Positions 1 to 35,400 of a stretch of DNA of 64,000 nucleotides are shown here, in pieces (the first letter of the stretch is position 1; each line of letters opens with the position of its first letter). The notes below the pieces were generated by a model. That model did no database searches, was not told the DNA's origin, and saw only the letters and a list, made by a program, of their open reading frames with translations. Both the position numbers and the translations under genes were made by a program. The stretch is from Haliotis rubra. Its lineage: Eukaryota. The stretch is from contig NW_025767033.1 of assembly GCF_003918875.1 (NCBI RefSeq), forward strand, positions 248,001 through 312,000, in the 5' to 3' direction.

Positions 1-544
1 TTCCCAGGAGTACTCTCCCCTCCTGACCCTGAAATATCAGCATGATGGACTCGTGTTATGTGAGTTATACCATGCACACACAGTAATAATCACTGTCATA
101 ATCAGGCCCAATCTTGGGTTAGAATCCACACAAGACCAAGGGACATATTCTTTGTGCCCATATACTGCAATTTTCTTTTAGCAAATATCGTCAAAACTTG
201 ACAACTCCATCAACAAATCTCTAGCATCTCTATATGCTTATAACTCATGTAAGTCAATATTTCGTATCATTCTTGAAATTACAGTGAAAGTTTCTATGAA
301 ACTACATTCTTTTTTTCATAACATTAAGCCCTTTTTAAGTCCTGTGCAATTTTATGTAGTCTACATTGAACAATGTCAAAGTTAACAACTTATTAAGTTG
401 TTATGAACCCTGCAGTTGAAAGTCAAAAGAGCAATGAAGTCTATAAAAGTATATTTGGATGCCAAGGTGTCCTTATCATAAACCAGAGCTGAAGAATCTG
501 TTATCCCCAAAAATGAAATAACATCACGACTACAGACACAAATC

Positions 545-3500
545 TCAGTAGCTGCTGTAGGTGATGGACTCCTTACTTGTGAATCTCTTCAGCAAATGTT
601 GTATATCCCCATCTGCTTCCCCCTCCGTACCTCTGTTCTCTGTGTCTGGAGATGAAGATGAGATGCATAAAAGTGACTGATCACATAATGGTGGAAAGGT
701 CCCAAGTGCAAATTGACTGATATATTGATTGATATACTGCCTTGAGACATATTGACAGATCAAGCTGATTGATACATACTGATCTATATAGCTTGCACTA
801 GAACAGCATAGTATAACATGGAGCATCACCTGTTTGTTCCACAGTCTCATCAGCAGCATCTGTAGCTTGTCTTCCTTCAGATGATGCCTCTGTAAGCAGG
901 ATCAGGTTACATAGTTAGCAAAGGCACTCATGCACAGGTCATGAACCTTACCTACTTGCTTTTGAGCTGTGGTGAGGTGAGGTGAGACGAGACGAGGTGA
1001 AGTTTGGTGAGGTGATGTGAAGTGATGGGAGGGAACAGGAAGAGAATGAAGGGCAGAGGAGGATTGGTTTGCCAAATGTTTGAGATTCCACTGGCTCTTA
1101 AGATACTCTGGGGCCGTGGGGTAGCCTAATGGTTAAAGCGTTGGCTCGTCACGCCGAAGACCCGGGTTCGAATCCCTACATGGGTACAATGTGTGAAGCC
1201 CATTTCTGGTGTCCCCCACCGTGATGTTGATGGAATATCTTAAGATACTTTAAACACTAACAGAACTTGTCAAGCTAGCAGACCAGAGCTCATTTACCTC
1301 TGTGAAGCAACATGTGCCAGGTACTACCCCAAATAGTGACAACATACAGCAGTACTCCTCAAAATGTCTGAATTTCCTCAGACCCTTGGATTCATATAAC
1401 ACTAACAGAAGTTCCCAGAGTTAGGTTAATTTCTATCCCTGAAGTTCATGCATAGAGTAGAGCTTGTTCAACATCATGGAGTCATAAATATAACTTTGAT
1501 TAGCTTACTAAGAATAGATAAGTGTGTATGTCACTATTACTCCAAAGTACAACTCAATGCAAGAAAACCCTGGAGCTCATTGCAACAAACTGGAGAGTGA
1601 GAAAAACGGTCTCATACTCACACACAATCACATGGTTTATGACCAATATCTCAACTGAGGATTCAGACTGCAACTGCTTCTCATCAACCTACACTGGTTG
1701 TACGAAGCAGCTTAAGAAATCACGTAGTCAGGATTGGTGACATGGTTGATTGTAAGTCATCATACCACCATGGCTTGGATTGTTATTCAAAATATCAGTA
1801 ACAGGATTGCATATTTCTGACTTGACCATTGACAGGCCACCCTCATACAGCCGGAATACTACTGAGAGCAGTGTTAAACAAAAAACAAAAAGTATTTAGT
1901 TCTGGCAGTTCCTCACCTTCAAGATGTTTCCTCCGATGACTGATGAGGCTAGCCATGCCCCTCATCTTCTCTCCACACTTCCTGCAGGTAAACACACTCG
2001 GCTGTCTCCTATGAGTTGTTGCACGGTGATATTTCAATGCTTTGAATGATTTAAACTGATGACCACATGTCTTACAACTGTGCTGATGGACAATATTATG
2101 CTTGATCTTACAGTGTCGTGTGAGGAAACGCTGAAACACAAACCCCTCCCCACACTGCCCACACAGGAAAGGCTTCGTACCAGCATGTTCTCGGAGATGG
2201 TTCGTCAAGCCAGCTCTATATTTAAACGTCCGACCACAAACCTCGCACATGTTGCTTGAACTGTTTGTATGGGAAGTTTTATGGAATGTCAGCCCTCGTT
2301 CAGACACACATCTAAACCCACACACATCACATTTAAACGGCCTGTCCTCTGCATGAGATTCATAATGAGCTTTCAAATCTGTTTTCAAATCAAACTTGTC
2401 CATACAGTACCTACACGAGAATTTCCGTTTTTCTGGATTCTTTTTTTATGATTCCTTTGCTACCAATGGGCACATTACTTGGACTTAAAGGCACCTTTTG
2501 CTGTGCAGCCAAATTTTCATGAATTTCTAAATGCTTATCGAGCAATTTTTTATGGGGAAATGTCCGAGGACATAAATGGCACTTCTGTCTGTTCGCAGAG
2601 TGTAATGCCATGTGTCGTTTAGCATGGATAAACTGGTTAAACTTCTTATCACACACTACACATGAATATGGCTTTTCCTGCGTGTGTATTTTCATGTGTC
2701 GCGTGAGGGAGCTCCTTTGGGCAAATCTTTTGCCACATGTTCCACACTTCTCTGGCTTGAAGCAGTTATGGGTTTCCATGTGAGTCTTGAGCAAGAATGG
2801 TTTGGAGAATCCTTTGCCACAGATGTCACATTTACACCTCTCCTGTCTCGATTTGTCATGCTTCAGACAATGCTCCTTGTAGCTCTGAATTTTGCTGTAG
2901 GATTTCTCACACAAATTACACTGGTACACCTTATCAGAAATAACAGCAGTCTTGCCTTGCGTTGGTGTTACTGCGATTTTCTCTAATAATTCCTTTTCTT
3001 CCTCTTTGGAGATAAAATCCTTTTTTATTTCTGTCAAATATTTCTCAGCATCTGTAAATATGAAAAGTAGCTTTAATTCAAATCTGAAAAATCTAGTTAT
3101 TACTGTGTAACTATTAGACTTGACAACATAAATCATTTGCAAGATAGAAAATATATAATTTTCATGGAGAGCATGTCCAGATAAGTGAATTCATATCGGA
3201 TCAAACACCTTCTTTTACGTTTCAAACAGATACATTTGGTTACACTATTTGGATTCTCAGTCCAGCCAAAACATAACACTGAAATTCCAGCCGACTTTGA
3301 CGAGGATGGAAACTGGAGGTTCGTACTAAATCACAGTCAGTGAACTCCCTTGTCTCGGGTAGATGATGAAAGAACAAAGGCAAAATGGGGTTCACTTTGT
3401 GCAAGAGTGTTTGTTTTAGTGTCTGCCAGACTAATGCCGGTTCTGTAGTGCTAGCACACTGAGATATCAACCCGTGACGATCTGTGTTAGAAATGTAAGT

Positions 3501-5951
3501 GTTGCTTCGCTGCTTTTTGTTATGCTTTAAGGAATATATAAGAAAAGAACCGCTTGGTTCAGAGTCAGTATACTGTGTCAAATGGGGTATGCATGTTAAA
3601 ACTACAGTGCGATGTCTCAGTGGTTGTTGTTGTTGGTTTGTAGGTAAACGCCGCACTCAGCAATATTCCACCTGTATGGCGGCGGTCTGTAAATAATTGA
3701 GTCTGGACCAGACAACCCAGTGATCAATAACATGAGCATCAATCTACGCAATTGGGATACAATGACATGCGTTAACCAAGTCAGCAAGCCAGACCACCCG
3801 ATCCCGTTAGTCGCTTCTCACGGCAAGTATCGGTTGCTGAAGACCAATTCTAACATATTTTGGTATGACACGGCCAGGGTTTGGACTACTGACCTTCCAC
3901 TCCCTGGACAGATGCTCTATCCACTAGGCCACCGAGGCAGTCCCTAAGTAACCATAACAAAGGTCTGTGTATGACTGAGAGAACATTTTTACCTGTATTG
4001 CTGTCACCAATGGGTGGTTGTTGACTTGCAGTTTCGGGCCAACACAGTGATCTCATTTGCCTCTTGTTGAATCTCGGACAAGTGCAGCATCTGGTCCGTG
4101 GTCACCACGATCACCTGTTCCTCATCTACCAACTGCTCGTATACCACCAGGGAACCTGTTTCCCCGGCAACACCAGCAATGGCTTGTAGAGCTTCCAGAG
4201 CTGATGATGTTTCAGCCGATGCCGCATCCTGGTTGTCAGACGGTGCATGGTGAGTTGTTCCTGGATAGGGTGGCAGGGCAATTTTTCTCACAGTTGGTTC
4301 ATTGGTAGTGAGGGTCATGTCACTGCTTATACTGAAAGAGTAGTCTCCCCCTGCCTGAGGCGTAGAGGGAAGGTCATGGACGATGATGTCAACTTGAGTG
4401 TCCTCTGTGGCCCCTGGGATATGTACTGGACTTCCTCGGACACAACAGGTCCATCAGTCGGGTCCAGGGGTGGATCTGGTTCAAGAGGTGGATCTGTTGA
4501 GAAGTCTTGACAGGCCTGAAACATCATGGCATGAAATTAGTACCGATAGGTACTAGATTTATCTAGAAAATCGTCCAAATCTCCAGCAGGTGTCAGTATT
4601 ACATACCAAACTGGAACTAAATATTTCCAAGTTCAAGCTATTATCATGATTATAGTCTGATCCTGTGAGTGAGTTAGTGAGTGAGTGAGAGTGAGTTTTG
4701 TTTTAAGCCACACTCAGCAATATTCCAGCGGTCCATAAATAATCGATTCTGGACCAGACAATCCAGTGATCACCTTTTGTGGCAAGAAGTTAAAAGCGGT
4801 AATTCATTGCTTTTTCAATGAACTGTTCTAAAATTCATGATAGTGTTCCCCTTAGCTACTAGGGAAATGATACAAAATTCAACCTGATGCACTTTGATGA
4901 CCTAATCACCTCTTTCAACATATTTTTATGCTAGCAAGTATTAGGTTACTAGTACTACAGTTAGAAGAAAATAGTCACAAATCTTACATAACTTGACATT
5001 GACAAATACTGTGAGAGTATATATTCCAGGTAATGCCAACTCACTAGTGTCTTTGAGAACAGGTTCCTGTACTCCTCCGTGTTGATTCTGGTCTCTATAC
5101 AGGAGAGATCTTCCAGGATCTTCTGAGTCACCACGCCACACTGACAGTGTCGAAGTAGTGGCCCACATCTACGGATGAACTTGTCCTGGGACAAACAGGC
5201 ATTTAATGACAATATCATACATATATAAGTTAAGCATGTACAGTCATTGTAATCATGGTAATCATTAGTTCTTGAGGTGAGGTGAGATGAGATGAGGTGA
5301 GGTGAGGTGAAATTGGGTTTTACGTACTGCTTGAGAATATTTCACTCATATGACCATCGTGCAATATGTATGTGTATGTCAGCAACTATCCCAGACTTAA
5401 GCTGGTTTTATAGTGCTAGCTCACTGAGATACCATGCCGCAGTGAAGCATGAATACCCCACTCAGACACAGTATACTGACTCCGAGCCGACCAGTCCTTG
5501 TTGTACCCATTAATGCCGAGCGCCAGGCAGGGACCAACAAGTACCATTTTTAACGCCTTTTTGAGTATGAGCCGGGGATCGAACCCGCCTTCCGCTCACC
5601 GGGCGGACGGTCTAACCACTACACCACGGAGGTGGTCCATTAGTTCTTGAAGGACACATACTTAAACTGTAATGAAACTTTCAAATGGTATGTTATCACT
5701 AACTGCTTAATTGAAAATGATGGTGTCACACCAGAAATGGGCTTCATAATGTCAGCTAAGGGGAAATGAACCCAGGTCTTCAATGAGGCAAGCTAATGAT
5801 TCAAACAGTAGGATAGCCCACTACCTGCTGAATGTACACATATTAGGCTGTGTTATTAGGTAATCAGAAATATTTCAGTGAGGATTACCTTCTCTTGACA
5901 ATTTCGGATTAGATAGTCATTGATCAGTTGGAGCTCTGACAAGGAATCCAT
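545..5951 (-). CDS. C2H2 zinc-finger protein A (11 fingers, ~673 aa if repaired) with an unassigned N-terminal Cys module; carries 3 single-base frameshifts (assembly error or pseudogene)
   Basis: Coding exons 5951-5889 (MDSLSELQLINDYLIRNCQEK), 5185-5045, 4515-3993, 3051-1917, 889-830, 645-545. All introns are GT-AG with matching phases (0,0,1,1,1). Exon 4 has 11 CxxC...HxxxH fingers with TGEKP-like linkers. The frame breaks at homopolymers 4411-4414, 4036-4038 and 2441-2447. Confidence 0.85.
1110..1238 (+). mobile_element. tRNA-derived SINE family 1, 3'-truncated copy
   Basis: A box (TAGCCTAATGG) and B box (GGTTCGAATCC); TSD TCTTAAGATACT. Confidence 0.9.
3622..3855 (-). mobile_element. SINE-like family 2 (non-tRNA head)
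   Basis: ~240-bp repeat sharing the GCTGGAATATTGCT...GCGGCGT tail with family 1. Confidence 0.85.
5275..5637 (-). mobile_element. tRNA-derived SINE family 3 (V-SINE-like body, (CACCT)n tail)
   Basis: tRNA head with A/B boxes; TSD CATTAGTTCTTGA. Confidence 0.85.
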
Positions 5952-6899
5952 GCTTCAGATGTCATCAATAATACACTTGTTTATTCATTACAAGCTGAAA
6001 TAGAAAGTTAAACTTAAACATGAATGATATCTGAACTTTGAGGAGAGAAACCCTAAGACCAGTCACGTTATTTGTGGTGAAAGATAGTTTCACAATGCAT
6101 TCAAGGCTAGTGCACTTATATAACGAAGAGTGTGGAAATCTGCTTGAAGTAGTCAAGACATGCCAGTTTTAGAGTATCAACCCACACAGATACCATGCCA
6201 CCATTTAACACTAATGCCCCTGCTCAGACATAGTATAACGACTCTGAGCTGACCAATCATGCAAGGCATGATAACAACAAGTACTGGGTTTTAATGTCTT
6301 CTGGTCTGATAGTACAGACCACGAAACTTCTCTACTCTGAGCAGACACTCTATCCATTACACTGACTGACACAATAGCAACATCACGGTGGGGACAGTGT
6401 CAAGCATTGTAAGAATCCTGGTCTTCGGCTGAGCCACTGAGAATGAGTACATGTATGTTTTGCAGTACAAGTGAAGAAAAAACTGATAACTTTTTGTTAT
6501 GAAAATCATGTGTAATGTATTTCAAACATGATCATGAAGCAAAATTCATCAGTACAAAGGAGCAACGGACAACTGGATGTGCATGTGGATATTAGAAACA
6601 TAAAATGATGTAATAATGCTGGAATACAAAAACATCAAAGAAAACTGATACTAAACTGTACCAATACATAGCTGCATTTTCATAAAACAACATAAAAACA
6701 TTTACAGAAAGTAGCCTCACTGAGAATGTGTGAAGAACAGGTGCAGACACTAAACCTAGACCATGTAGACTGTTGGACCCCATCGCGGCCCAGACTATTA
6801 GACTGATATTAGTGTATAATCTTATTGAAAGTGCCAAGTAAAAACAAAATTGAGCGACATATAAACTATAATATTTACTTTTAAACATGTAGTGGTTTA

Positions 6900-7450
6900 T
6901 AACCACGCAAAGGTGTTCTATACTTCGTGTACAATACCTGCAACAACCGCATGGACCTTTTATTACAAATGCCAGAAATGTAAGCGGAAGTTATCGTTTG
7001 GAGCAGAGCAGGTGCGCGATAAATATTCATCGAAGGAGGTTTTCAGGTCTTGTTAAACTATTAGCTTTGTGAGAAGGATACATGGTGGAGATTTATAATA
7101 CTTGAAATATCTATATTTTCCCAGATTGTTCATGGACATTTATGATTTTATCCAACAATATATTTGGTGCGTGCCTACTTGGATACTGTCTTCCGGTTAT
7201 AAAACCTTCATCGTTTGTTAAAAGTTGAATAGAAAAATCATACGTTGTGACATTCACGCTCCTATATTGGATTATGTTTATTTTTTGAAGACACGCGTCT
7301 TAGGTTTCTTGTTTGTTTCCTATGTATTCCGCATATGGGCAAGTGGATATGGAAAAGTGTTGTCATGGACGGTTCAGTATGTTGCTATTTCAGACGCCAT
7401 GCTCTGTCAATTATGGTTACGTGTGTTTAAGAATGGCGATGAAAATATAT
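6900..7450. promoter_or_regulatory. Probable bidirectional promoter between the divergent ZNF genes
   Basis: The start codons are 1.6 kb apart. The region is locally CpG-richer, with ETS-type motifs GCGGAAGT (6984-6991) and CTTCCGG (7190-7196) in opposite orientations and a YY1-like AATGGCG at ~7432. Confidence 0.5.
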
Positions 7451-7548
7451 TTTGAGCACTTTTAAAGAAGCAGTTATACTCATAGTATTGTAAATACAAC
7501 AGCAGAGAAGCGATGCATCTAACTAATAATTGCTTTACCTGGTGAGAG

Positions 7549-10500
7549 ATGGACCTAGGGGAGAGATACGATCGACTCATTGCAAAATGTGTTGAAAAGG
7601 TAAAGTTTTAACATTTTAATTTTATTTTAAGTATTTCTCTTGCAAGCCTGCCATTAAACCAATTGCATTTCCTAACAGTTTTGTGTACCACCGCAATATA
7701 GCTGGAATATTGCTTGGTGCAGCGTAAAGCTCGCTTGCTCACTCACTCACTCACGTCAGCATAGTCAAGTTCTTGTTCCTTGAGGAAAGAGTAACTTTAT
7801 AATAATGGGTAGCCCAGTAAGGCTGAAGGGGTCGTCGGCACAGGTACTACAGATACGTACCCCAGGTACGCTTCTGTATACAGATATGTACCCTAAACAA
7901 AGTCAAAATACAGAAATGTACCCGATACCCTAAAAGGCAGACGAGTCCATATTCCGCAATCCAAAACCGAAACTGCATGTAGTTCAACTGATTGCGAGTG
8001 GTATTCATATGCATTGCGAATATCCGTTACTGTGTATTCTCATTACTTACATAAAGCAATCAAATGTATCTAATACAACAGCATGACAGTTCCGATCAAG
8101 AATATGACACAATGGGAATGGAATCGTCCTAGGGTACGTTTCTGTATTCTCATTATGGCCAGGGTACGTTTCTGTATACAGAAACGTACCTGGGGTACAT
8201 ATCTGTAGTATCCGTGCTACAACGACCCCTTCAGCCCCAGTAAGGGTATAGGTGTTTGCTTGTATGCTAATTACAAAAATGTACATAATACAACTCACCT
8301 GGTCTATTTGCATCATATGCAAAGGGGGCGGTGGGGTAGCCTAGTGGTTAAAGCGTTGGCTTATCACACCAAAGACCCGGGTTCGAATCCCCACATGGGT
8401 ACAATGTGTGAATCCCATTTCTGGTGTTCCCCCGCCGTGATGTTGCTGGAATATTGCTAAAAGCGGCGTAAAACCAAACTCAGTCAGTCAGTCATATGCA
8501 AAGGAGAGTGAGTGAGTAAGTATCGTTGTATGCCGCTTTTAACAATATTCCACCAATATCTCAGTAGGGGACACCCGAAATGGGTTTCACACATTGTACC
8601 CATGTGGGGAATCGAACCCGGGGTCTTCAGTGTGATCACTACAACAGTCAACAGGGTAACAATCAGGCTACCCCACCGTCCCACATGCTGAAGAAACTAG
8701 TTTGGGACACATGCTGCTGAAAATGCCTGTTTACATATAGAGGTAAACAGTTCAAGTCAATGTATTTTAACTTAAGGAGAACATTTATATTGTCAGAATT
8801 TCTGAGAGAATATGTTTTATGATAGTATCCCAAGAAAACAAAAAATCATCCATGGTATGCAGTGGTTTGTTTGTAAGTTTCTTAGATATTGTTTATCTTT
8901 CATATATTATCACGATTATGATTTATGGATTTGTCTTATTCAATAATATTTCAGGACAAGTATATCCGGCGCCTGGGAAATGTACTGAGAGGCTGTCGTT
9001 GTGGTATTGTCACAGAAATGCTGCTTGATGAACTATGTTTGACTGAATCTGACCTGGAGAAAAACGAATACCTGCAGCTTCTGTCTCCTTTTGTACACAG
9101 CCAAACACGAGTTAGCCTACAGGTGACTATATCTTCACCTCTTCGGTTTGAGTTTAGTAATGTAATCCCTTTATGTTTTTTAAAAGAAGTTCAGCATTGG
9201 TAACTAACTTTTTCTTGTGCACTTAAAAATGGCAATTTTTTACTTTTTTGTTGGGCACTTTGGCAAGGACAATAGGACCAGTAGCAAGTTCTATTGCTGG
9301 CAGTTATCAGATGTTGATCCTGGTACTTTTTCAGCATATTATCTAGTAAAAACTATTATAAAATATAAGATTATAACATTCTTTGAGTGGCATTTTAGAA
9401 TTCGGGAAGTACAATATAGAACAAACTTTATGGATAACAACTTCTTTTTATTCGTGCTTGACAACGTACAAGAATCTGTATCGAAACGTCGCACTCACAA
9501 ATAAAAAGAAGTTGGTATCCATAAAGTTTGTTCTATATAAGATTATAACATTTCATTTCATATTGTATTAGCTCTTCAATGTCAGCTTGCTAATCCAGTT
9601 ATCATGTTGTTGTCAAAATTTATTTCTCAGTCTTTTGTTGAAATATTTACAGCCTAAGTTTAATTTTCAGTGAATGAAGTAATATGGCATTTTGACATTC
9701 ATCTTGTTCTTTCTTCTTCTAAATCACGTTAATGATTTGAAATTTTTACTGACATTTGCTGCAGACTTTTGACTGAATACTGGATTTTTATAATGTTTAC
9801 TTAGTCCTTAGAAACGAGAGGCATACCTAGTCCATATTTGTCATTTTCACAGTGTAAAATGAATACATTGCAGGGAGATGTGAGTGCCAGCGAGAAGTAC
9901 CCTATAGTATCTGTACATAACAACTCTCCAGTGAACAATGTTGTACCCTGGGTGCAAGTCACAGCTCTCACTGCATTGTCTGCTGAACTGGCAGCTAAAC
10001 AAGATGACCGACTTCACCAACAACCAACCGAAGCATATCACAGGAATGATCGAGATGACACACATTTTATCTCAGTATCAGACAACAGGTCATTCCCAAC
10101 TCAAACTACACATGACGTCACAGAAAACTTTGCTGACAGACCCAACATAGAATCTGAACACAGCTATGCCAATGGATCGGAAATATCAGATCCAGGATCA
10201 CAGTACGTTCCTCAAGGCATCATCAGTCTTCCAGAGTCCAACCATTTCAACAGAGTCAGTATTAATGGAGTAAACGAGGAGTATCAGCCCCAGCATGTAC
10301 ACGGGGAGGGTGGGGACAGGCCGCATACCACCGTAGAGGAATCGGGGGGAAGGTATGTTACCACGAACAGTCAATACCCTGAGGCCACAGCGATGAGTGA
10401 TACAGACCACAGTGATCGATTCATCAGCCGGCAGAGTTCAGAAACGGGAAACTTATTGAATAATTTGACTGATTTAGCATATCAAAATTTTGTGGACAAT

Positions 10501-12283
10501 GTCCCATTTTCACCCGTGTCCCCAGCAGAGTCAAGCTCTGAGATCTTCAACCTGCAGCCTCCAGTAATTCCGATACAGGTGACAGACAACAGAGTGCAGC
10601 ACTTACCAGGTAGGGTTTGTTCTTTGTTTGTGAAACATCTTTACACCACACTCAGCTATATTCCAGCTGTGTGATGCTGTCTGTAAATAATCAAATCTTG
10701 GTTGATATCTTTAACAGATTCAGACAATTGAGATACAGCTTAACCATTCAACCAGCCTATCCTACATACTCACTCACCAGCCTGATTGTCACAGACATAT
10801 TTCTGATATTGATGAGACACACCTATGAAATACATTGACCACTCAGAATCAGCAAACTGATCCCCCCACCGCATCATACCAAAAGACGTTAAAATATGGT
10901 ACTTGTTGATCCCTGCCTGGCTGCATGGACTGGTCGCCCCAGAGTCTGTATAATGTGTCTGAGGGGGTAAAATATCTCATTGGGCTAGCACTATAAAACC
11001 AGCTTAAGTCTGGGCTAGTACAAGCAGCCGCATTACATACACATTATTGACACGCATGCACGCGTGACGTGAAAATCCAATTTCACCTCACCTCACCTCA
11101 GTCAGCATCGTGATCGTATCGTAGCGTGACATAGTGTATCGTCCCAGCCCTAGCTGAAAGGAGTGTATGGGTAGTCTAATGGTTCAGATTTGATTCCTCA
11201 CACCTGGAACATTGCAAAAGGTGGCATAAACCCAACTCACTCACTCATGCTTAAACAAATTTTCTTTCAATTTTAGCTGTACAAAAACCTTCAGAGTCAC
11301 AAGATCAGGTGGAAGTAAGACCGAAGATTACTTCCCACAAGTCTAAGTATCGATGTGATGTGTGTGGAAAATGCTTTGCTAAGCCATCAAAACTAAATGA
11401 ACACGTCCGAGTCCACACTGGAGAGAAACCTTTCAGATGTCCCACCTGCCAGAAGTGTTTTGCCCAGTCGGGTACCCTGAAGTACCACATGAGAATCCAC
11501 TCTGGAGAGAAGCCGTTCACATGCGCAGATTGTGGCAAGACATTCACACAGCCGGGGCAGCTGTCGTCACACGCACTCATCCATCAAGAAAAGTCCCATA
11601 AGTGCCAGTTGTGTAAGAAAAGCTTCACAGAAGAACTGTTACTGGAACGCCACATGAAAATCCACAAAAAGGAACGCCCCCATAAATGTGACAAATGTGG
11701 AAAGTGTTTTCTCCACTCAGGTAATCTCGTCATTCACAAACCGAAGTGTTGTGGGGCAGATGAAGAACTGAAATGTAAGGAGTGTGGGAAGGTGTTCCAG
11801 TCTCGGGACGATCTAGAAGATCACGATGAAGATCATTCGAAAAACAAGCCCCATCAATGTGAAATTTGTTTGAAGAGATACAAACAGGCAATAAGCCTTT
11901 GTAAGCACCGGAGTTCCCACGTGGAGCTCAAACAGAAGCTGCATATGTGTGAGCTGTGTGGGCAGTGTTACAGTAAACCCAGCCTACTGAAAATACACTT
12001 GAGGATCCACACAGGTGAGAAACCTTTCATGTGTGATTTGTGTGGCAAGTTTCACGGCTCTGCAAACAATCTTCGACGTCACATGCTGTCCCACACAGGG
12101 GAACGTAATTTCAAGTGTAAGGATTGTGGGAAGGACTTCTCAACTGCACATAATCTGGAGTACCACTCTCGTGTTCATTCTGGTTTAAAGCCATTTAAAT
12201 GTGACATTTGTGGAAAGGGTTTTCCCTTTTCCTTCAGTCTAGACCGTCATATGCGGACTCATAAGAACGCTCATCGTACATGA
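7549..12283 (+). CDS. C2H2 zinc-finger protein B (~660 aa, 11 fingers incl. one C2HC) with the same N-terminal module
   Basis: Exons 7549-7599 (MDLGERYDRLIAKCVEK|gtaaag), 8955-9122 (tcag|DKYIRRLG...|gtgact), 9853-10609 (acidic/Ser-rich linker), 11277-12283 (fingers with HTGEKPF linkers). Phases 0,0,1 are consistent and the frame is open. Confidence 0.92.
7822..8235. mobile_element. MITE, Mutator-type
   Basis: ~75-bp imperfect TIRs (GCTGAAGGGGTCGT.../...ACGACCCCTTCAGC) and a perfect 9-bp TSD CCCAGTAAG. Confidence 0.88.
8324..8680. mobile_element. Two SINE family 1 copies, tail-to-tail (8324-8490 plus; 8507-8680 minus)
   Basis: tRNA heads with A/B boxes; TSD TCATATGCAAAGG around the first copy. 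Confidence 0.9.
9381..9535. mobile_element. Penelope-like non-autonomous insert with inverted arms and a hammerhead-like core
   Basis: TSD TATAAGATTATAACATT, ~39-bp inverted repeat, core TTGACAA...GAAAC. Confidence 0.7.
10868..11100 (+). mobile_element. SINE family 3, 5'-truncated/degenerate
   Basis: Similarity to 53910-54188. Confidence 0.75.
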
Positions 12284-13381
12284 TTGGTGACTTACCTCAT
12301 AGTATTCATACTTGTTGAAACAATTTTGAAACTTTTATACCACTCTGTGTACAATGTTCAGTGATATTTTAAGCTCACCTGATCTGAAAAAGTTATCCTG
12401 TGTTGTTTTTGTTTATCACCCACCATCTGCCTGTCAAAAACGTTTACTCTTTCAATATCACTTCTGAATCCATCCTGTGTAGAAAATATCTGATGCTTGA
12501 AACATCAATATAGCATTATTTTGGTTGTTCTAAATGAATCATATTGAAATGTGAGCGGAAAGTTTGCAGTGTGTTCTTGAAAGTGCTTTATCATTTGTCA
12601 TGGCCTTTGGTTATGTTTGTTGTGCATTTAAAGCTTCGACTATATTTTTACATTTTTTTATCTCTGTACTATTTTGATGGTCATGATCATTATGACTGTG
12701 TATAACAATCAGCATCCTGATTAATCCATGTTTGTGTTTGAAATATTCCAGGAAAAGTCCAACTACTAACTAGCACTTTAGCTTTGTTTGTATAACCCCT
12801 GTAGTACCAAGAGGTTGTGAAAAGTCACTAAGTGGAAAGGGTCGTTAGGCTCACTGACTTGGTAGATGGCGGGGATCATTATCACAATATCAGTCACTGG
12901 ATTGTCTGGTCCAGACTTGGTTCTCTACATGATGTCATAATGTGATTTGAATTTATCTGAAGCAAATGTAAGCAATATGAAAGGTAAAATCTGATTGTCT
13001 GTTTTGAAGGACATAGAAGGGGCGTAACTCTTAATAATAATTTTGGTCACATTACGATCACAATTGTTTAGCAAGGGTGGAAACTAGACTTGAACTGAGG
13101 GCAGTTGATTCCCTCACCTCAGGAAATACCAATCCAGGATTAAACATCACAAATGTTTGCTCCATTTTCATTTGTTTTTTAATGATGATTTCCCTCTTGT
13201 GCTATTGAAGAAGTGTTTCAGCTACCACACTCTAACTTAGTCTAAGGATGCAGTTTGTAAGAGACAGATTTCAGTGGTCTGATTATCCAACTGTTCACTG
13301 TTTATATATATAACTATTGAACTATGTTGAAGATATCCATCTCTAAACGTGACTAGATAACTGAATGTTCCTATATGTCCT

Positions 13382-13533
13382 GGGGCAGTGGGGTAGCCTA
13401 GTGGTTAAGGCGTTCGCTCGTCACGCTGAAGACCCGGGTTCAATTCCCCACATGGGCACAATGTGTAAAGTCCATTTCTGGTGTCCCCCGCCGTGATATT
13501 GTTAAAAAAACGGCGTAAAACGTAACTCACTCA
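13382..13533 (+). mobile_element. SINE family 1
   Basis: tRNA head, (ACTC)n tail, TSD ATGTCCTG. Confidence 0.9.
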
Positions 13534-14517
13534 TAAATGTCCTGCATCAGTTGTCAGCGATCTAACCAAGCTTTTTTGTCTAGTGGCTAAAGCTTAGAAG
13601 AGGCACTGTAAGGATATGCCTATCTTTGTATCCATTTATGATAAGGGTCTGTATCCATTTTTAGAAACTGAAGGGGCTCACTGGGAGCCTTGTGTAAGGG
13701 GGTAACAATGTTTCTATGCTGAGTTGTGTCCCTTGGTTGTGCCAGATACCTATGATTGTGTGTTCACATCCCTGTTCTCTCGGTTATATTTCAAAGATTG
13801 TCAGTATTGTACCAAACCTTGTGGCTTTCCTCTCATGCTGAGCTGAAACAAGGTGATTAAATGGAATACAGTGAAAACAGTGTTAAGTCACCTCCTGATA
13901 ACTACTCAAACAACTGTTACCTGACCAACTGTTATGGTTACTGCATATACCTCGAGTGATACTGCTACAACGAATTTATCTTGGTGATGTGTTTCAATTA
14001 CATTATACAAGGGATTTGTTCTCCCTTATAGAAATCCACATGCAGCCTGTTTCCTTTGTAAGCAGCTTTTCTTGGATTTATGTCTCCTGTTCGGAAGGGA
14101 TGCATAGTTTATTTTGCGATCCCTTGAAGCAATTATATTCTAGCAGTCACTGATATAAAATTACGAGAAACATTTACCTTGATCATTGATTATGATATAA
14201 ATAACTGTTTTGAACCAGGCTTGATTTGTCTTGCCTAGATTTGTTCATTTATAAGTTGCTATTAGCTGATTTTCCTTGGCCAGACTCAATTTACAAGCTG
14301 CCTTTCACTGATTTGTCTTGACCAGACTTCTTATATACAGGCATCTGCATCTGAAATATTGTTGAGTGAGGGGTTAATCAAGAAACTAACGACAAGAGAT
14401 GTACATTTTCTTTGTGCTTAGGCACAAGTAGCACAAAAATGTCAGTTGTTGTTTTTTAAAACAGAGCAGAGGTTGCATGCTCGTGTCAGAATGAGCATGT
14501 GACAGTCATTGTTACCA

Positions 14518-18386: not shown

Positions 18387-21148
18387 CTAAAGGAAAGCAT
18401 CTTGTGTGATTTCTTGGTTGTTGGAATGTCTGTCAACAAACACATCCGCAATGTCGTTCTTTCCCATCTCACGTAGTGCACGCTCCATGTACTTCACCCG
18501 GTCCCTCGTCTTCACGTCCGCCGTCAGTTCCTTCCACAACAGAAGACACTTCTCCGCAACAGATATGCGAAGCTTCTCGTTCTCTTCTGATATGCCGTCG
18601 TCGGTGATGGCGTAGATGCAGTTGACGATGGTTGTGGTGGGGATGTTGAGCATCATGGCCAGCACGACGCCGTTGAGGTTCTCCGGTCCTATATTACGGG
18701 CCAGCATCACCAGACTGGAGTCGGTGAGGACTTCTACGTCCTTCTTGGGCGGGGCTGTGTTGACTGCAACATAGGGAGGAAGTTTCTGAGTTAACACGTT
18801 TCAGTTTGTGAGAGTGCAAGTGATGGTAGTGAGTTTAACAATGCTTTCAACTAAAGTCCAGTTGAAGGAAAACCAAGTTCTATGGATAGTCAACTTCTTT
18901 ATTGCGACGTTTCGGTGTAGGTACTAACACCGTTATCAAGCAAGTGATCACTTGCTTCATAACGGTGTTAGTATACCTACACCGAAACGTCGCACTCATT
19001 GCAATAAAGAAGTTGACGATCCATAGAACTTGGTTTTCCTTCATCTATACAACTTCTAAAATGCCTCTCAAAGAAATTAAAGTCTAGCTATTTGATATGG
19101 CAGGAAAAGTGATGTAGAGTTCAGACTTCCACTTCGGTGAAACGCACTGTGGGCTGAAAAACGTAGAAACTTAATCGTCAAGAACCAGGCTAGCTATTCT
19201 CGAACGTCCGTAGCCTACGAACTTCGTAAGCCCATTCTCATAACACATTGGCCTACGATCAAAGTTAAGAATTCTTAGGGTTTATCATAGGCTCACGATC
19301 GGGAAACAGGATTCGAACGCACAACAACAGGTGTCTTTTCATGCCCAGTGTAGGCAGCTCTACACAGCAATTTGCGGTTAGGCGACCCATTATCCATCCG
19401 AGTACATGTGGGTGAATGAATTTGGCTTATTGTGGCTTTGAACAGTATTCCAGCTGTATTATGACGTGTTTGATAAAACGTGGAATGTTTTAGACTTTCA
19501 CCACTTTTGTGAAACAATCTGACACGGGTATTGTGCTGAGGAAACCTAAAACCAGAATCGGGATTCGAAACCATAATCACAGGTTTCTGGTGAGTCGGTG
19601 AAAAATATCTAGTTGATAATGTAACAAATAATGCATTATGGCCTTAACAGTTCGCGTGTCAAGGCTACTAGCAAAACAGGGTATCTTTATACACCTCATT
19701 TACAAAGATCGGTAAGTCCAATTACTACACTAGTCCCCGCGACTTGCAATGCTCCTGTTGTGTATTGATTGCCCATTTTATGAATCCATGGGTCATTGTA
19801 ATGTCTCGCGATTTAATCGTTTGTTATTTCCGGCTAGAATATGCCTAAGTAGCCTAGGTTTGCCGTTCGATAGGTTGAGTCGCTCGGATAGTCACGGTGG
19901 CCTGGTCGTTTGTCATCGTAACCTGGTGGGATAGGACATCACTCATGTAAATGACTGGACTCTCTGGTGCAGAATCGGTAGTTGAGAGAAATCTGAAAGT
20001 AGCTGGTATATTTCTGAGTGCGACGTTAAAAACGAAAGTAGACACAAAAACATGGTTGCATGCGCGTAACTACGTAAAAGTATAATTTTGGGCTTCGTAT
20101 GAAATGAAGTACATGAGGCAGATTACATGAAGTCTTTGTTTTCACTCCGGTACAAGGGGGTTCAAGTCACCTATGTGTCACTTGTCCCTTGAGTCCTGAG
20201 GTCCAGTTGTACGTCACCTATAGTGCTGGTTTCATGTCACCTGGAGTCCTGAGGTCCAGTTCTACGTCACCTATAGTGCTTGTCTCATGTCACCTGGAGT
20301 CCTAAAGGTCCAGCTTTACGTCACCTATAGTGCTTGTCTCATGTCACCTGGAGTCCTGAGGTCCAGCTTTACGTCACCTATAGTGCTGGTCTCATGTCAC
20401 CTGGAGTCCTGAGGTCCAGCTTTACGTCACCTATAGTGCTTGTCTCATGTCACCTGGAGTCCTAAAGGTCCAGCTTTACGTCACCTATAGTGCTTGTCTC
20501 ATGTCACCTGGAGTCCTGAGGTCCAGCTTTACGTCACCTATAGTGCTTGTCTCATGTCACCTGGAGTCCTGAGGTCCAGCTTTACGTCACCTATAGTGCT
20601 GGTCTCATGTCACCTGGAGTCCTGAGGTCCAGCTTTACGTCACCTATAGTGCTGGTTTCATGTCACCCGAGTCCTGAAGTCCAGCTTTACGTCACCTATA
20701 GTGCTTGTCTCATGTCACCTGGAGTCCTGAGGTCCAGCTTTACGTCACCTATAGTGCTGGTCTCATGTCACCTGGAGTCCTGAGGTCCATCTTTACGTCA
20801 CCTACAGTGCTTGTCTCATGTCACCTGGAGTCCTGAGGTCCAGCTTTACGTCACCTATAGTGCTGGTCTCATGTCACCTGGAGTCCTGAGGTCCAGCTTT
20901 ACGTCACCTATAGTGCTGGTTTCATGTCACTTGAGTCCTGAGGTCCAGCTTTACGTCACCTATAGCGCTGGTTTTATGTCACCTGGAGTCCTGAGGCCCA
21001 GCTGTACGTCACCTATAGCGCTGGTCACATGTCACCTGTAGTCCTTGGTTAGGGATTACAAAAAAATCAGGATTACAGTTTTACACAGAAATCAAGAAAA
21101 TACCTTACATCTTACTGAACGCTTTCCGGGTTTGGTCCTCGCTTCCAT
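18387..21148 (-). CDS. Small (~138 aa) death-domain-like protein with an N-terminal RVxF-type motif
   Basis: Exon 2 (18763-18387) reads LTDSSLVMLARNIG...LAMMLNIP...CLLLWKE...MERALREMGKNDIAD, a death-fold-like helical pattern, after acceptor tgttgcag (phase 1). Candidate exon 1 (21148-21109, MEARTKPGKRSVR+T|gtaagg) is phase 1, with TATAAG ~100 nt upstream. Exon 1 is less certain than exon 2. Confidence 0.72.
18863..19077. mobile_element. Penelope-like palindromic insert with two opposed hammerhead-like cores
   Basis: ~180-bp near-perfect palindrome centred on GTGATCAC; tail TTCTAAAATGCC(T/A)CTCAAAG shared with the 9381 element; TSD TAAAGTC(C/T)AG. Confidence 0.75.
20166..21044. repeat. 53-bp minisatellite, ~16 copies, in the intron of the death-domain gene
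   Basis: Unit GTCACCTATAGTGCTGGTCTCATGTCACCTGGAGTCCTGAGGTCCAGCTTTAC. Confidence 0.97.
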
Positions 21149-32426: not shown

Positions 32427-35400
32427 ATGGCGCTGTGTCAGACGTTGATTGTAATAGGGGTTTTACTAGGAACCTATGGCCGTAAGTAATACCACTAATT
32501 CTGTATTAATCGTGATATACGATGTATGACTGAGAATTTTAGTCTTTAGACCAAATGACTGTTCGTTACAGTCATATGACCAAATGATTGGTTTGACAGA
32601 TTGACTGTAACTTATATACCTTGACAAGGATTTTCTTTGCTATTAGTCAAATTATTTGCTCGTTGGTTTAAGGTGGATGTATGTTTTATTTGGTGTTCCC
32701 TTCACTTTACATCGTTACCATGTAATAATCCGAATAATGTTCTTATGTTGTAAATACATCAACATGAATAGGAACAAGTAATACGATAACAAATGTTTCT
32801 ATAAACTTGACGACAAAGCGTTCAGTTGTACTTTATACTGCAGAATATGGTTACTTCTCCAGGCATAAAAGTATCCTACAAGCCATCACGGCATGCTGAC
32901 ATTTTTTACATGTAATCTACAAGCCGTAATGTTTTCGTTTCACAGTATTCCTGAGATTTTTAGCATAATATGTGCTGTCTCTTCCTATATTCGTGTACTT
33001 TTCTTAGCGCCAGTCAGACTGCAAAGAGGTTAGTTGCCTGTAATCAGTACAGCCTCGATGTAAAATGTTTAGATTTTGAATAAGCGAGCTTGATTAAACG
33101 CCTTGAACCTGTTTCTGTCCTATGACGGTATTAACATACATGGACACTAGAAATGTTTCTTACTGTTATCCCTTAAACGGTTTATGGTCCTTACTCTTAA
33201 GATGACAATAGAAGTAACGGAATATTGCTTCAAGTAGAAACTGAAAAGCAGATTTGTCAACTTGCTGATCGCGAGGGTTCTTGTAATTTTGGGGTTTCAA
33301 AATCTTGTGCTCCATTATCAAAATGCCAGATCATACTTGATCATGACACACGACAAAATGAATATTAGTATGTTGTTCACGATGTAAAAGTGACAGACCA
33401 CATAGCTCCTCGAGATGAGTGAGTGAGTAAGCCGCTTTTAGCAATATTCTAGCAACATCGGTCCATGAGATGAATGCCGTCTAATTGATCCTTGCATGCT
33501 GTAACCGTGAATCTAGAGTGTTCTCAACCAAAATCTGCAGTGAATATGTACGGAGAGGATTCTTTACGGTTGAAATATTCCTTTCCCTTTCCTTTTGTTT
33601 CATAAGATAGATTTATGTCTGCCGACTGTGGTGGGAAAACCGAAATGCCTAAAAGACTTCCTTGAAACCAAACAGTGACTTCTCCCAATATTTACACTTG
33701 GAAAAGCGTGTGGTCAGATTATGTACAATATGAAACTCTGTACTGTTACCATTTCAGCCGGTTGGACACGTGGTGGGAAAGAATATGTTCTTGTATCCCT
33801 TGGGAGTCATGGCGGTGCGATCAAACCATTCGATATATCTGTGACTACGCCTTCAGTGAACCTGACGTCGGCGTCTGTGACAACCTCGTGGGATCTCACC
33901 TCATCTGAGAACATCAGCGTGAGCGCAACCCAGGGACACTTGCTCTCTTATGGAATGGACGGGGTTCTTCAGGGTAGCTCAGCTCGAGGGAAAGCCGTTC
34001 ATATTCAGACACCGGATGAAATAGACGTTTCTGTAATCAGCAGATTTACCTACTCTGATGGAGTTTATCTTGGCCTACCTGTTGAGAGTCTAGGTCAGGT
34101 CTGTTTCATTCTAACGCCAGATGACTGTTCAGACAACTGTCACATCGCCTTTGCTGCAACGGAGGACAACACGACGGTGTCCTTGACTCCAGGGGAGATA
34201 ACCACAAACTGGGAGCATGTGCCAGGAATGACGAGTCGTAATCAGACATTTACTTTTCAGCTCGACAAACACGAAAGCTTTAAAGTTAGCAGCGCGTCTG
34301 ATATTTCCGGTACGCGCGTGTCGTCCGATAAACCTGTCGCAGTATTTTCAGGGAGTGCTGGATTAAGGGGAGACAACCATGAGTCTGTTGTAGAGCAGCT
34401 TCCGTCAACTGATCATTGGGGTCGGACCGTCTACACCATTCCAACACCGAACCAACGGTCGAAATATAACATTTATAAGGTCATAGCTTCCGACGGCAAC
34501 ACAACTGTCTCAGTTGGTGGCCAAGTGGCTGACCTACCTTACCCTGGGTCTTTCGCCACCGCAACCCTGCCATCCGATGCTTTCCTTAAAATAACCAGCA
34601 ACAAGCCCCTGCTGGTGATGAAGATCGTCCCGAGGAACACCAGTGTTGTTCAAGGGCAGGACGAATGCATGTCGCTCGTACTCTCAATGAACCAGTATAT
34701 TTTAGACACGTCCTTCTTCTCACACAACGACTACAACAACTACGTCTCCATCGTCATCAACGTCACCCACAAAGATGAACTTCTTCTGGACCAGACTCCT
34801 CTTCCCGATACTACCAATTGGACGGTGAGCGACGATCTCGAGATGGCTCTGGGGGTGTTGCTGGTGGGTAGCGGCAGTCACACCCTCGCCACGGATGCCC
34901 CTGGAGTCAGGTTTGCTGCCTACCTGCACGGCGTCAGTATCAACACAAACGCAACCGTATGCATGCCGCTAGGTGTCGCCCTTTCTGTCAGTCGATGGGT
35001 AAGTTGGTAAAATAGTATATAAGAAACTAAATTATGTTTCGTTGGTTTCAGACCCTTTACATGTTAGTAAAGTTAAACTAAAGACCTCAAATTTTGCGAC
35101 TTCAAATGGACCCATCACCAGAACCAAACCGGTGTTTTGCTGGTAGGACATTTACCTCCATTATCCGAAATATCTCTTCTTGAAATAATAAAGGCACATC
35201 GGCTTTTCTAAATAATATAGCATTGTAGAACGGCCTATACATTTACGTAACACCGTTATTATGGGTAATGGCATATAACATCGTCGCAATCCTTATACTA
35301 CAAGGAGAATGTATAGTCAGGGAACTATACTCCATGAAATGTATAGGGACTAGTGTAATTAATCACCGGGTTGTCTGGTCCAGGCTGAAATAACCATCGG

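What the first reader, a model, noticed from the sequence alone, without database searches (positions are those of the whole stretch)
5045..9122. Divergent C2H2-ZNF pair sharing an unassigned ~60-aa N-terminal module: candidate mollusc analogue of KRAB/ZAD
Seen in sequence: splicing the short first exons, which the ORF track misses, gives A = SELQLINDYLIRNCQEK|DKFIRRCGPLLRHCQCGVVTQKILEDLSCIETRINTEEYRNLFS and B = MDLGERYDRLIAKCVEK|DKYIRRLGNVLRGCRCGIVTEMLLDELCLTESDLEKNEYLQLLS. They align without gaps at 27/61 identities (hand count). The phase-0 intron sits at the same EK|DK position, and the consensus is LIxxCxEKDK[FY]IRRxGxxLRxCxCG[IV]VTxxxL[DE][DE]L...ExxxxxxEYxxLxS. The following linkers are unalignable and the DNA-contacting finger residues differ. 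Established: KRAB-, ZAD- and FiNZ-ZNF families have this layout (small conserved effector exons, fast spacer, one large finger exon), and KRAB-ZFPs are known transposon repressors. Inference: this is a lineage-specific effector or dimerisation domain (helical, with C + CxC and a possible fourth Cys as zinc ligands) defining a ZNF family. It does not resemble KRAB, SCAN, BTB, ZAD or SET as I know them.
Basis: partly seen in the sequence, partly recalled or inferred. Interest (0 to 1): 0.9.

Follow-up and report, generated by a model that had tools for sequence, protein, structure and literature searches.

The report
Abalone zinc-finger gene pair, shared N-terminus
Two neighbouring, oppositely oriented abalone zinc-finger genes share a real, strongly conserved and so far unnamed 61-residue N-terminal module, but I found it only in these two genes, so it looks like the private domain of an old gene duplicate and not a mollusc counterpart of KRAB or ZAD.

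Summary
Both short first exons exist with ATG starts, GT/AG borders and the phase-0 EK|DK junction. The two peptides share 27/61 identities without gaps (blastp E 1.5e-18; no shuffle comes near). The window is Haliotis rubra. RefSeq models from four Haliotis species join exactly these exons to the finger exons.

The module has no match in Pfam, PDB sequences or the ESM Atlas. It is under strong purifying selection: gene A has 0 nonsynonymous against 17-18 synonymous changes.

The KRAB/ZAD-analogue reading is not supported:
- A full HMMER scan of 1.84 billion representative proteins found only the gene B orthologue cluster. The one other hit, a moth FLYWCH protein, is a repeat-sum artefact.
- The window holds just these two copies.
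- Both genes are 1:1 orthologues across the genus.
- Fingers are conserved (omega 0.04-0.07; DNA-contact residues vary at 2/40 and 9/44 positions), and the linkers are constrained (omega about 0.1).
- The two genes share exon phases 0/0/1, which points to one ancient inverted whole-gene duplication.

AlphaFold models are low-confidence but all-helical, with three helices.

Best reading: a lineage-restricted interaction or dimerisation module of two conserved transcription factors.

In this assembly gene A carries three 1-base indels, probably assembly errors.

The parts
5889..5951 (-). Gene A coding exon 1 (21 aa, MDSLSEL...CQEK), first part of the module; phase-0 GT donor
   Evidence: 100% identical at protein level in four Haliotis species, and it is the CDS start of the RefSeq models in three of them
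5045..5185 (-). Gene A coding exon 2 (47 aa, DKFIRR...SKTL), main part of the module; AG acceptor and phase-0 GTGAGT donor
   Evidence: 0 nonsynonymous against 17-18 synonymous differences between rubra and cracherodii/rufescens over the module
3993..4515 (-). Gene A linker exon 3 (523 nt, ends in phase 1). In this assembly it carries two 1-base indels relative to three other species, within 4405-4418 and 4029-4043
1917..3051 (-). Gene A finger exon 4 (11 C2H2 fingers). A 1-base insertion lies in an A-run within 2435-2452. The 3' end at a putative GTGAGG donor is approximate, and the last exon(s) lie left of the window
5952..7548 (.). Head-to-head intergenic region (about 1.6 kb between the two ATGs). 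The arrangement is kept in four species, and promoter-proximal blocks (about 5952-6258 and 6938-7548) align between species at 71-76% identity
   Evidence: promoter function is inferred
7549..7599 (+). Gene B coding exon 1 (17 aa, MDLGERYDRLIAKCVEK), first part of the module
8955..9122 (+). Gene B coding exon 2 (56 aa; module residues 18-61 plus a 12-aa tail)
9874..10609 (+). Gene B linker exon 3 (736 nt, ends in phase 1); no Pfam domain
11277..12283 (+). Gene B finger exon 4 (10 canonical C2H2 fingers by pattern) with stop codon

Best explanation
The window (Haliotis rubra, blacklip abalone) holds a head-to-head pair of paralogous C2H2 zinc-finger transcription-factor genes. They arose by one ancient inverted whole-gene duplication and have been kept as 1:1 orthologues throughout the genus. 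Each gene has two small 5' coding exons, one linker exon and a large finger exon, with intron phases 0, 0 and 1. The two small exons encode a 61-65 aa module with no relative in current domain libraries. It is probably all-helical: a long amphipathic N-terminal helix with a 3-4 hydrophobic seam, a conserved G-x2-LR-x-C-x-C-G loop, and two short helices. Most likely it works as a protein-protein interaction surface, either for homo- or heterodimerisation of the two factors or for docking a cofactor. The conserved cysteines may stabilise it through a metal ion. What is shown: the exons, their splicing in public gene models, the homology, the selective constraint, and the restriction to two genes. 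What is inferred: the helical fold, the interaction function, and any zinc binding.
For: The exons and junctions are present. A and B are homologous at E 1.5e-18. The window is identical to the H. rubra contig, and RefSeq B models of four species are reproduced exactly by the four exons. The A models start at the module exon in three species. A and B share the same exon order and the same phases 0/0/1. Module omega is 0-0.05 in A and 0-0.15 in B for the informative pairs (0.30 for the near-identical cracherodii-rufescens pair), at dS of 0.17-0.63. Only 2/65 (A) and 4/61 (B) module columns vary among four species, against 12-22% of linker columns. Both AlphaFold runs predict three helices in the same register in A and B. 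The weak language-model neighbours are coiled-coil or oligomerisation domains. The module matches no known family.
Against: Both structure models are low-confidence (pLDDT 54 and 57), so the helical fold is only indicative, and Foldseek found nothing. There is no direct evidence for dimerisation, cofactor binding or metal binding. The family size of two is a lower bound. The A orthologues themselves were not returned by the representative scan, so the sequence standing for their cluster evidently lacks the module, and other members could be hidden the same way. No mollusc genome DNA could be searched with these tools.
Confidence: 0.6

Rival explanations
1. One reading: the module is the defining effector or dimerisation domain of a lineage-specific, expanding mollusc ZNF family that represses transposons, analogous to KRAB, ZAD or FiNZ.
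For: The layout is the same as in those families: small N-terminal exons, a linker and a large finger exon. The module is unassigned. Mollusc genomes hold very many ZNFs (PMC10547256). Another scan note (s1-339664) reports a different or related unassigned N-terminal domain in four clustered ZNF paralogues elsewhere in this genome; I did not test it.
Against: Only one cluster was hit among 1.84 billion representatives, and nothing outside Haliotis was found. The window holds two copies only. Both genes are 1:1 orthologues, with finger omega of 0.04-0.07 and contact residues almost fixed. There is no sign of copy-number expansion or of positive selection on the fingers.
Confidence: 0.1
2. The module is above all a small zinc-binding structural domain, with ligands Cys in helix 1, the CxC loop and a fourth Cys. 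This could coexist with the interaction function above.
For: Three Cys are strictly conserved between A and B and in all four species (B positions 14, 31, 33). A further Cys lies 11 residues (B) or 12 residues (A) after the last of them. The conserved CxCG motif sits in a predicted loop.
Against: The fourth Cys is not in register between A and B. No His or Cys pair matches a known zinc-knuckle, treble-clef, C2H2 or FLYWCH spacing. Pfam zinc-finger models do not hit the N-terminal 330 residues. Metal binding cannot be tested with these tools.
Confidence: 0.2
3. The module is a degenerate FLYWCH-type (WRKY/GCM1-fold) zinc finger that has lost its HxH half.
For: The only other hit of the 1.84-billion scan was a protein made of six FLYWCH repeats (E 3.2e-4). 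hhalign gives 79% probability over 20 columns. Gene A even has a C-x6-C spacing at the position of the two FLYWCH cysteines.
Against: The E-value comes from summing six near-identical repeats. The best single repeat scores 13.3 bits, which is E 6e3 for the library. The hit is from a moth. The Pfam FLYWCH model does not match any module peptide at E up to 10. There is no HxH. The first FLYWCH cysteine is Leu in B. The models are helical, not beta.
Confidence: 0.03
4. There is no discrete domain. The similarity is only residual paralogy at the N-terminus, without a function of its own.
For: Only two genes carry it, and no structure is confidently predicted.
Against: The module is the only non-finger part still alignable between A and B. 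It is also the most constrained part within the orthologues: 0 nonsynonymous against 17-18 synonymous changes in A. The intron position is conserved.
Confidence: 0.07

Closest known systems
ZAD (zf-AD, PF07776) of arthropod ZAD-C2H2 proteins
   Same: It is also an N-terminal accessory domain of multi-finger C2H2 proteins, about 60-90 aa long, cysteine-containing, with a long amphipathic helix. ZADs are homodimerisation domains (PMC7913770), which is the function I consider most likely here.
   Different: ZAD has four invariant zinc-binding cysteines, a treble-clef fold with two beta strands, and dozens of paralogues per genome (PMC7913770). The module has C...CxC...C with one Cys out of register, is predicted all-helical, gives no Pfam match and occurs in only two genes.
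KRAB (PF01352) of tetrapod KRAB-ZFPs
   Same: The gene layout is shared: small N-terminal effector exons, a linker, and one large finger exon.
   Different: There is no sequence match. KRAB-ZFPs form large, fast-evolving clusters, whereas these two genes are conserved 1:1 orthologues with constrained fingers.
FiNZ domain of cyprinid FiNZ-ZNFs
   Same: It is a short lineage-restricted N-terminal sequence on ZNFs with no similarity to known domains (PMC10547256).
   Different: FiNZ is 28 aa long, Glu-rich and present in about 700 zebrafish genes, many of them under positive selection (PMC10547256). The module is 61 aa long, carries conserved Cys, occurs in two genes and is under purifying selection throughout.
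FLYWCH zinc finger (PF04500)
   Same: A 15-20 residue stretch (R-x-G/S-N-x-L-R-G-C-R-x-x-V-V-T) is similar.
   Different: There is no HxH and the cysteines are not conserved between A and B. The Pfam model gives no hit, and the similarity is not significant for a single repeat.

Membership tests
C2H2 zinc-finger proteins (zf-C2H2 PF00096 / zf-H2C2_2 PF13465) | Tandem C-x2-C-x12-H-x3-5-H fingers recognised by the Pfam models | tested here: met
   The pattern scan found 10 fingers in B and 11 in A. Pfam gives zf-H2C2_2 at E 4.6e-54 and zf-C2H2 at E 1.8e-45 on the B orthologue.
KRAB-ZFP | N-terminal KRAB box recognised by PF01352 | tested here: not met
   No Pfam family matched at E up to 10 on four module peptides, nor at E up to 1 on residues 1-330 of B.
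KRAB-ZFP / ZAD-ZNF / FiNZ-ZNF (as a kind of family) | Many paralogues per genome with lineage-specific expansion and fast-evolving finger specificity | tested here: not met
   One cluster was hit in 1.84 billion representatives, and the window holds two copies. Finger omega is 0.04-0.07, and contact residues vary at 2/40 (B) and 9/44 (A) positions. Whole mollusc genomes could not be scanned.
ZAD (zf-AD) | Four invariant zinc-coordinating cysteines in a treble-clef fold (PMC7913770) and a match to PF07776 | tested here: not met
   No Pfam hit. The cysteine pattern is C-x16-C-x-C-x11/12-C, with the last Cys out of register. The low-confidence models contain no beta strands.
ZAD (zf-AD) | Homodimerisation | not testable with these tools
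   Only monomer prediction was available, and there are no experimental data.
SCAN / BTB / SET | Match to the Pfam models | tested here: not met
FLYWCH | W-x-C ... C ... H-x-H zinc ligands and a match to PF04500 | tested here: not met
   No PF04500 hit. There is no HxH, and the first Cys is missing in B. The best single-repeat score against the FLYWCH protein is 13.3 bits.
FiNZ | 28-aa Glu-rich N-terminal sequence of cyprinid ZNFs (PMC10547256) | not tested
   No FiNZ sequence or model was at hand. Length, composition and taxon differ, judging from the paper's description.

The most novel reading that the evidence does not exclude
The module is a new cysteine-stabilised dimerisation domain that does the job of ZAD in a gastropod lineage, letting the two paralogous factors pair selectively. 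It would have further, still unannotated or masked members in Haliotis and other vetigastropods. The unassigned N-terminal domain noted in a four-gene ZNF cluster elsewhere in this genome (s1-339664) might be one of them.
Probability: 0.12. Interest if true: 0.55.

Novelty: new variant of a known kind. Interest (0 to 1): 0.3.

Why it matters
C2H2 factors often owe their regulatory logic to an N-terminal accessory domain such as KRAB, SCAN, BTB or ZAD, and none is described for molluscs. This locus gives one clean case: an orphan domain under strong constraint, with a fixed intron position. It also shows that the case is a conserved two-gene affair. It is not the signature of an expanding transposon-repressor family, which lowers the wider significance. 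It stays useful as a defined 61-aa target for dimerisation, zinc-binding and tethering assays. It also warns that the H. rubra annotation splits gene A into two models and misses the module exons.

Tried and rejected
- **Pfam.** I scanned four module peptides at E up to 10 and residues 1-330 of B at E up to 1. Nothing matched.
- **PDB sequences.** A profile search at E up to 10 returned nothing.
- **ESM Atlas.** Searches by features and by structure gave only sub-threshold neighbours, scoring 0.64-0.78.
- **Foldseek.** The AF2 model against PDB gave no match with E below 5, and the model is too uncertain to count.
- **Word-based homologue searches.** I used B exon 2, B residues 1-75 and B residues 1-335. 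They returned only the Haliotis B cluster. A and B share no 5-residue word, so this tool could not have found relatives at that distance.
- **FLYWCH lead.** Followed and rejected as a repeat-sum artefact.
- **Degenerate C2H2 finger.** Gene A has C-x-C-x12-C, but B has x11, the hydrophobic core positions do not fit, and no Pfam finger model hits. Rejected.
- **Pseudogene status of gene A in H. rubra.** There are three 1-base indels, but the frame-corrected sequence has no stop and keeps a low omega. All three sit at base runs, so assembly error is more likely.
- **Scan notes by sequence.** The look-up was blank.
- **A-orthologue protein ids.** I could not obtain them: their 860-866 aa lengths fall outside the length window of every contiguous query available.
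Full report
**1. What is in the sequence**

On the minus strand, an ATG-initiated 21-codon exon lies at 5889-5951 (MDSLSEL...CQEK) and is followed by GTAATC. A 47-codon exon at 5045-5185 is preceded by tcccag, begins DKFIRR and ends SKTL before GTGAGT. On the plus strand, a 17-codon exon lies at 7549-7599 (MDLGERYDRLIAKCVEK, then GTAAAG). A 56-codon exon at 8955-9122 is preceded by tttcag, begins DKYIRR and ends before GTGACT.

The BLOSUM62 local score is 139, against 25.8 +/- 5.1 (maximum 65) in 5000 shuffles. Pairwise blastp gives E 1.5e-18.

A six-frame scan finds C2H2 fingers only downstream of these two starts: 1924-2920 on the minus strand and 11354-12262 on the plus strand. tblastn finds only these two copies of the module in the 64-kb window.

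**2. Origin and gene models**

A profile of the two exon-2 peptides was scanned by HMMER against 1.84 billion representative proteins. It returned a 653-aa protein at E 8.9e-26. This protein belongs to a four-member cluster of RefSeq proteins from Haliotis cracherodii, H. rubra, H. rufescens and H. asinina, all 653 aa long.

The H. rubra locus (GCA_003918875.1, contig QXJH01000358.1) is base-for-base identical to the window. An exact spliced mapping of the four proteins onto their loci gives four coding exons. In window coordinates these are 7549-7599, 8955-9122, 9874-10609 and 11277-12283.

For gene A, the RefSeq models of H. cracherodii, H. rufescens and H. asinina (860, 861 and 866 aa) begin exactly at the MDSLSEL exon. 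In H. rubra the gene is split into two models of 309 and 409 aa that lack the module exons.

By cross-species comparison, gene A continues as follows:
- Exon 3 lies at 3993-4515.
- The finger exon runs from 3051 to about 1917.
- At least one further exon lies left of the window.

Intron phases are 0, 0 and 1 in both genes. blastp between A and B aligns only the module (44% over 66 aa) and, generically, the finger arrays. The simplest history is one inverted duplication of a whole four-exon gene before the Haliotis radiation. The head-to-head arrangement, with 1.6-2.9 kb between the two ATGs, is kept in all four species.

**3. Constraint**

I computed Nei-Gojobori dN/dS on codon alignments of the four species.

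| Region | Gene A | Gene B |
|---|---|---|
| Module omega | 0-0.05; 0 nonsynonymous against 17-18 synonymous differences for rubra vs cracherodii/rufescens, 2 against 10 for rubra vs asinina | 0-0.15 for informative pairs at dS 0.17-0.37 |
| Linker omega | 0.07-0.13 | about 0.10 |
| Finger exon omega | 0.06-0.07 | 0.04-0.07 |
| Variable module columns | 2/65 | 4/61 |
| Variable linker columns | 23/197 | 59/274 |
| Variable contact residues (-1, 2, 3, 6) | 9/44 | 2/40 |

The module is thus the best-conserved non-finger part. The genes as a whole behave like ordinary conserved transcription factors, not like arms-race ZNFs. The 'fast spacer' holds only between the old paralogues.

**4. Is it a known domain?**

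- Pfam gave no family at E up to 10 for four module peptides, and none at E up to 1 for residues 1-330 of B. The C-terminal half gives the expected zf-C2H2 and zf-H2C2_2 hits.
- A PDB sequence profile search found nothing at E up to 10.
- The ESM Atlas gave only sub-threshold neighbours. The named ones are coiled-coil or oligomerisation domains at scores of 0.64 or below.

The only other hit of the large scan was a 400-aa protein from the moth Eumeta, made of six FLYWCH repeats (E 3.2e-4). hhalign gave 79% probability over 20 columns. However, re-scoring shows that the E-value is the sum of six near-identical repeats. The best single repeat scores 13.3 bits, which is E 6e3 for the library. The module has no HxH, the first FLYWCH cysteine is Leu in B, and the Pfam FLYWCH model does not hit. 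I reject this link.

**5. Family size**

No relative outside Haliotis was found by the exhaustive scan. The word-based searches with B exon 2, B residues 1-75 and B residues 1-335 also found none.

Two caveats apply. First, the A orthologues themselves were not returned by the scan although they must score about 100 bits. The representative of their 50%-identity cluster therefore lacks the module, and the count is a lower bound. Second, no mollusc genome DNA was searchable with these tools. A family of tens to hundreds of members, as for KRAB, ZAD or FiNZ, is nevertheless very unlikely to have escaped, because four Haliotis RefSeq proteomes are in the library.

A scan note (s1-339664) mentions another unassigned 80-90 aa N-terminal domain in four clustered ZNF paralogues elsewhere in this genome. 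I could not get its sequence, so any relation is untested.

**6. Structure and mechanism**

AlphaFold2 on B residues 1-75, with a six-row alignment, gave pLDDT 54 and pTM 0.29, with helices at 3-29, 36-47 and 53-65. On A exon 2 it gave pLDDT 57, with helices in the same register. Foldseek against PDB found nothing.

Read directly from the sequence, helix 1 carries a 3-4 spaced hydrophobic seam (B: L3, Y7, L10, C14, I21, L24, L28). The conserved G-x2-LR-x-C-x-C-G stretch falls in the loop between helices 1 and 2. Gene A has a Gly-Pro there.

My best reading, which is inferred, is a small helical protein-protein interaction module, either for dimerisation or for cofactor docking. The three strictly conserved cysteines may bind a metal together with a fourth Cys that is offset by one residue between A and B.

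**7. Gene A in this assembly**

Relative to the three other species, H. rubra has three 1-base indels:
- a deletion after GGGG (window 4405-4418);
- an insertion in GGCCCG (4029-4043);
- an insertion in an A-run (2435-2452).

Read literally, these truncate the protein soon after the module. The frame-corrected sequence has no stop codon and keeps omega at 0.05-0.13. Assembly error, or very recent damage, is therefore more likely than an old pseudogene.

**8. Verdict**

The proposal that it is a mollusc analogue of KRAB or ZAD defining a ZNF family is not supported. It is the private N-terminal domain of one conserved paralogue pair in abalones. Interest is moderate to low.

Noticed in passing
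window 4405-4418, 4029-4043, 2435-2452 (minus strand, gene A): Gene A carries three single-base indels at short base runs relative to H. asinina, H. cracherodii and H. rufescens. They explain why the H. rubra annotation splits the gene into 309-aa and 409-aa models that lack the module exons. They are probably assembly errors.
   Followed up: partly
window 7838-7923 and 8132-8217 (intron 1 of gene B): An inverted repeat with 86-nt arms (84% complementary, 208 nt apart), which looks like a foldback or MITE-like insertion.
   Followed up: no
window 8325-8431 and 8567-8682 (intron 1 of gene B): Two tRNA-like SINE heads in inverted orientation, with 56-nt arms 93% complementary. ARAGORN calls no tRNA in 1-14000. 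Similar tRNA-like segments lie in intron 1 of gene A, near 5400-5640.
   Followed up: no
window 33721-35010 (+): A 429-aa open reading frame with a full IgGFc_binding domain (PF17517, E 5e-46), probably an exon of a mucin- or FCGBP-like gene.
   Followed up: partly
window 18387-18797 (-): A 136-aa ORF that coincides with the start of an annotated 138-aa product kept next to gene B in three species. It has no Pfam match.
   Followed up: partly
L001 1-1933 (H. cracherodii, downstream part of gene A): At least 1.9 kb of a tandem repeat with a 30-nt (10-codon) unit, open in all three frames. It sits where H. rubra has intron sequence, so the array is species-specific.
   Followed up: no
gene B module exons (window 7549-7599, 8955-9086): Synonymous divergence in the B module (dS 0.17-0.37) is about half that of the linker and finger exons for the same species pairs (0.27-0.85). 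The sample is small, but it could reflect nucleotide-level constraint near the 5' end.
   Followed up: no
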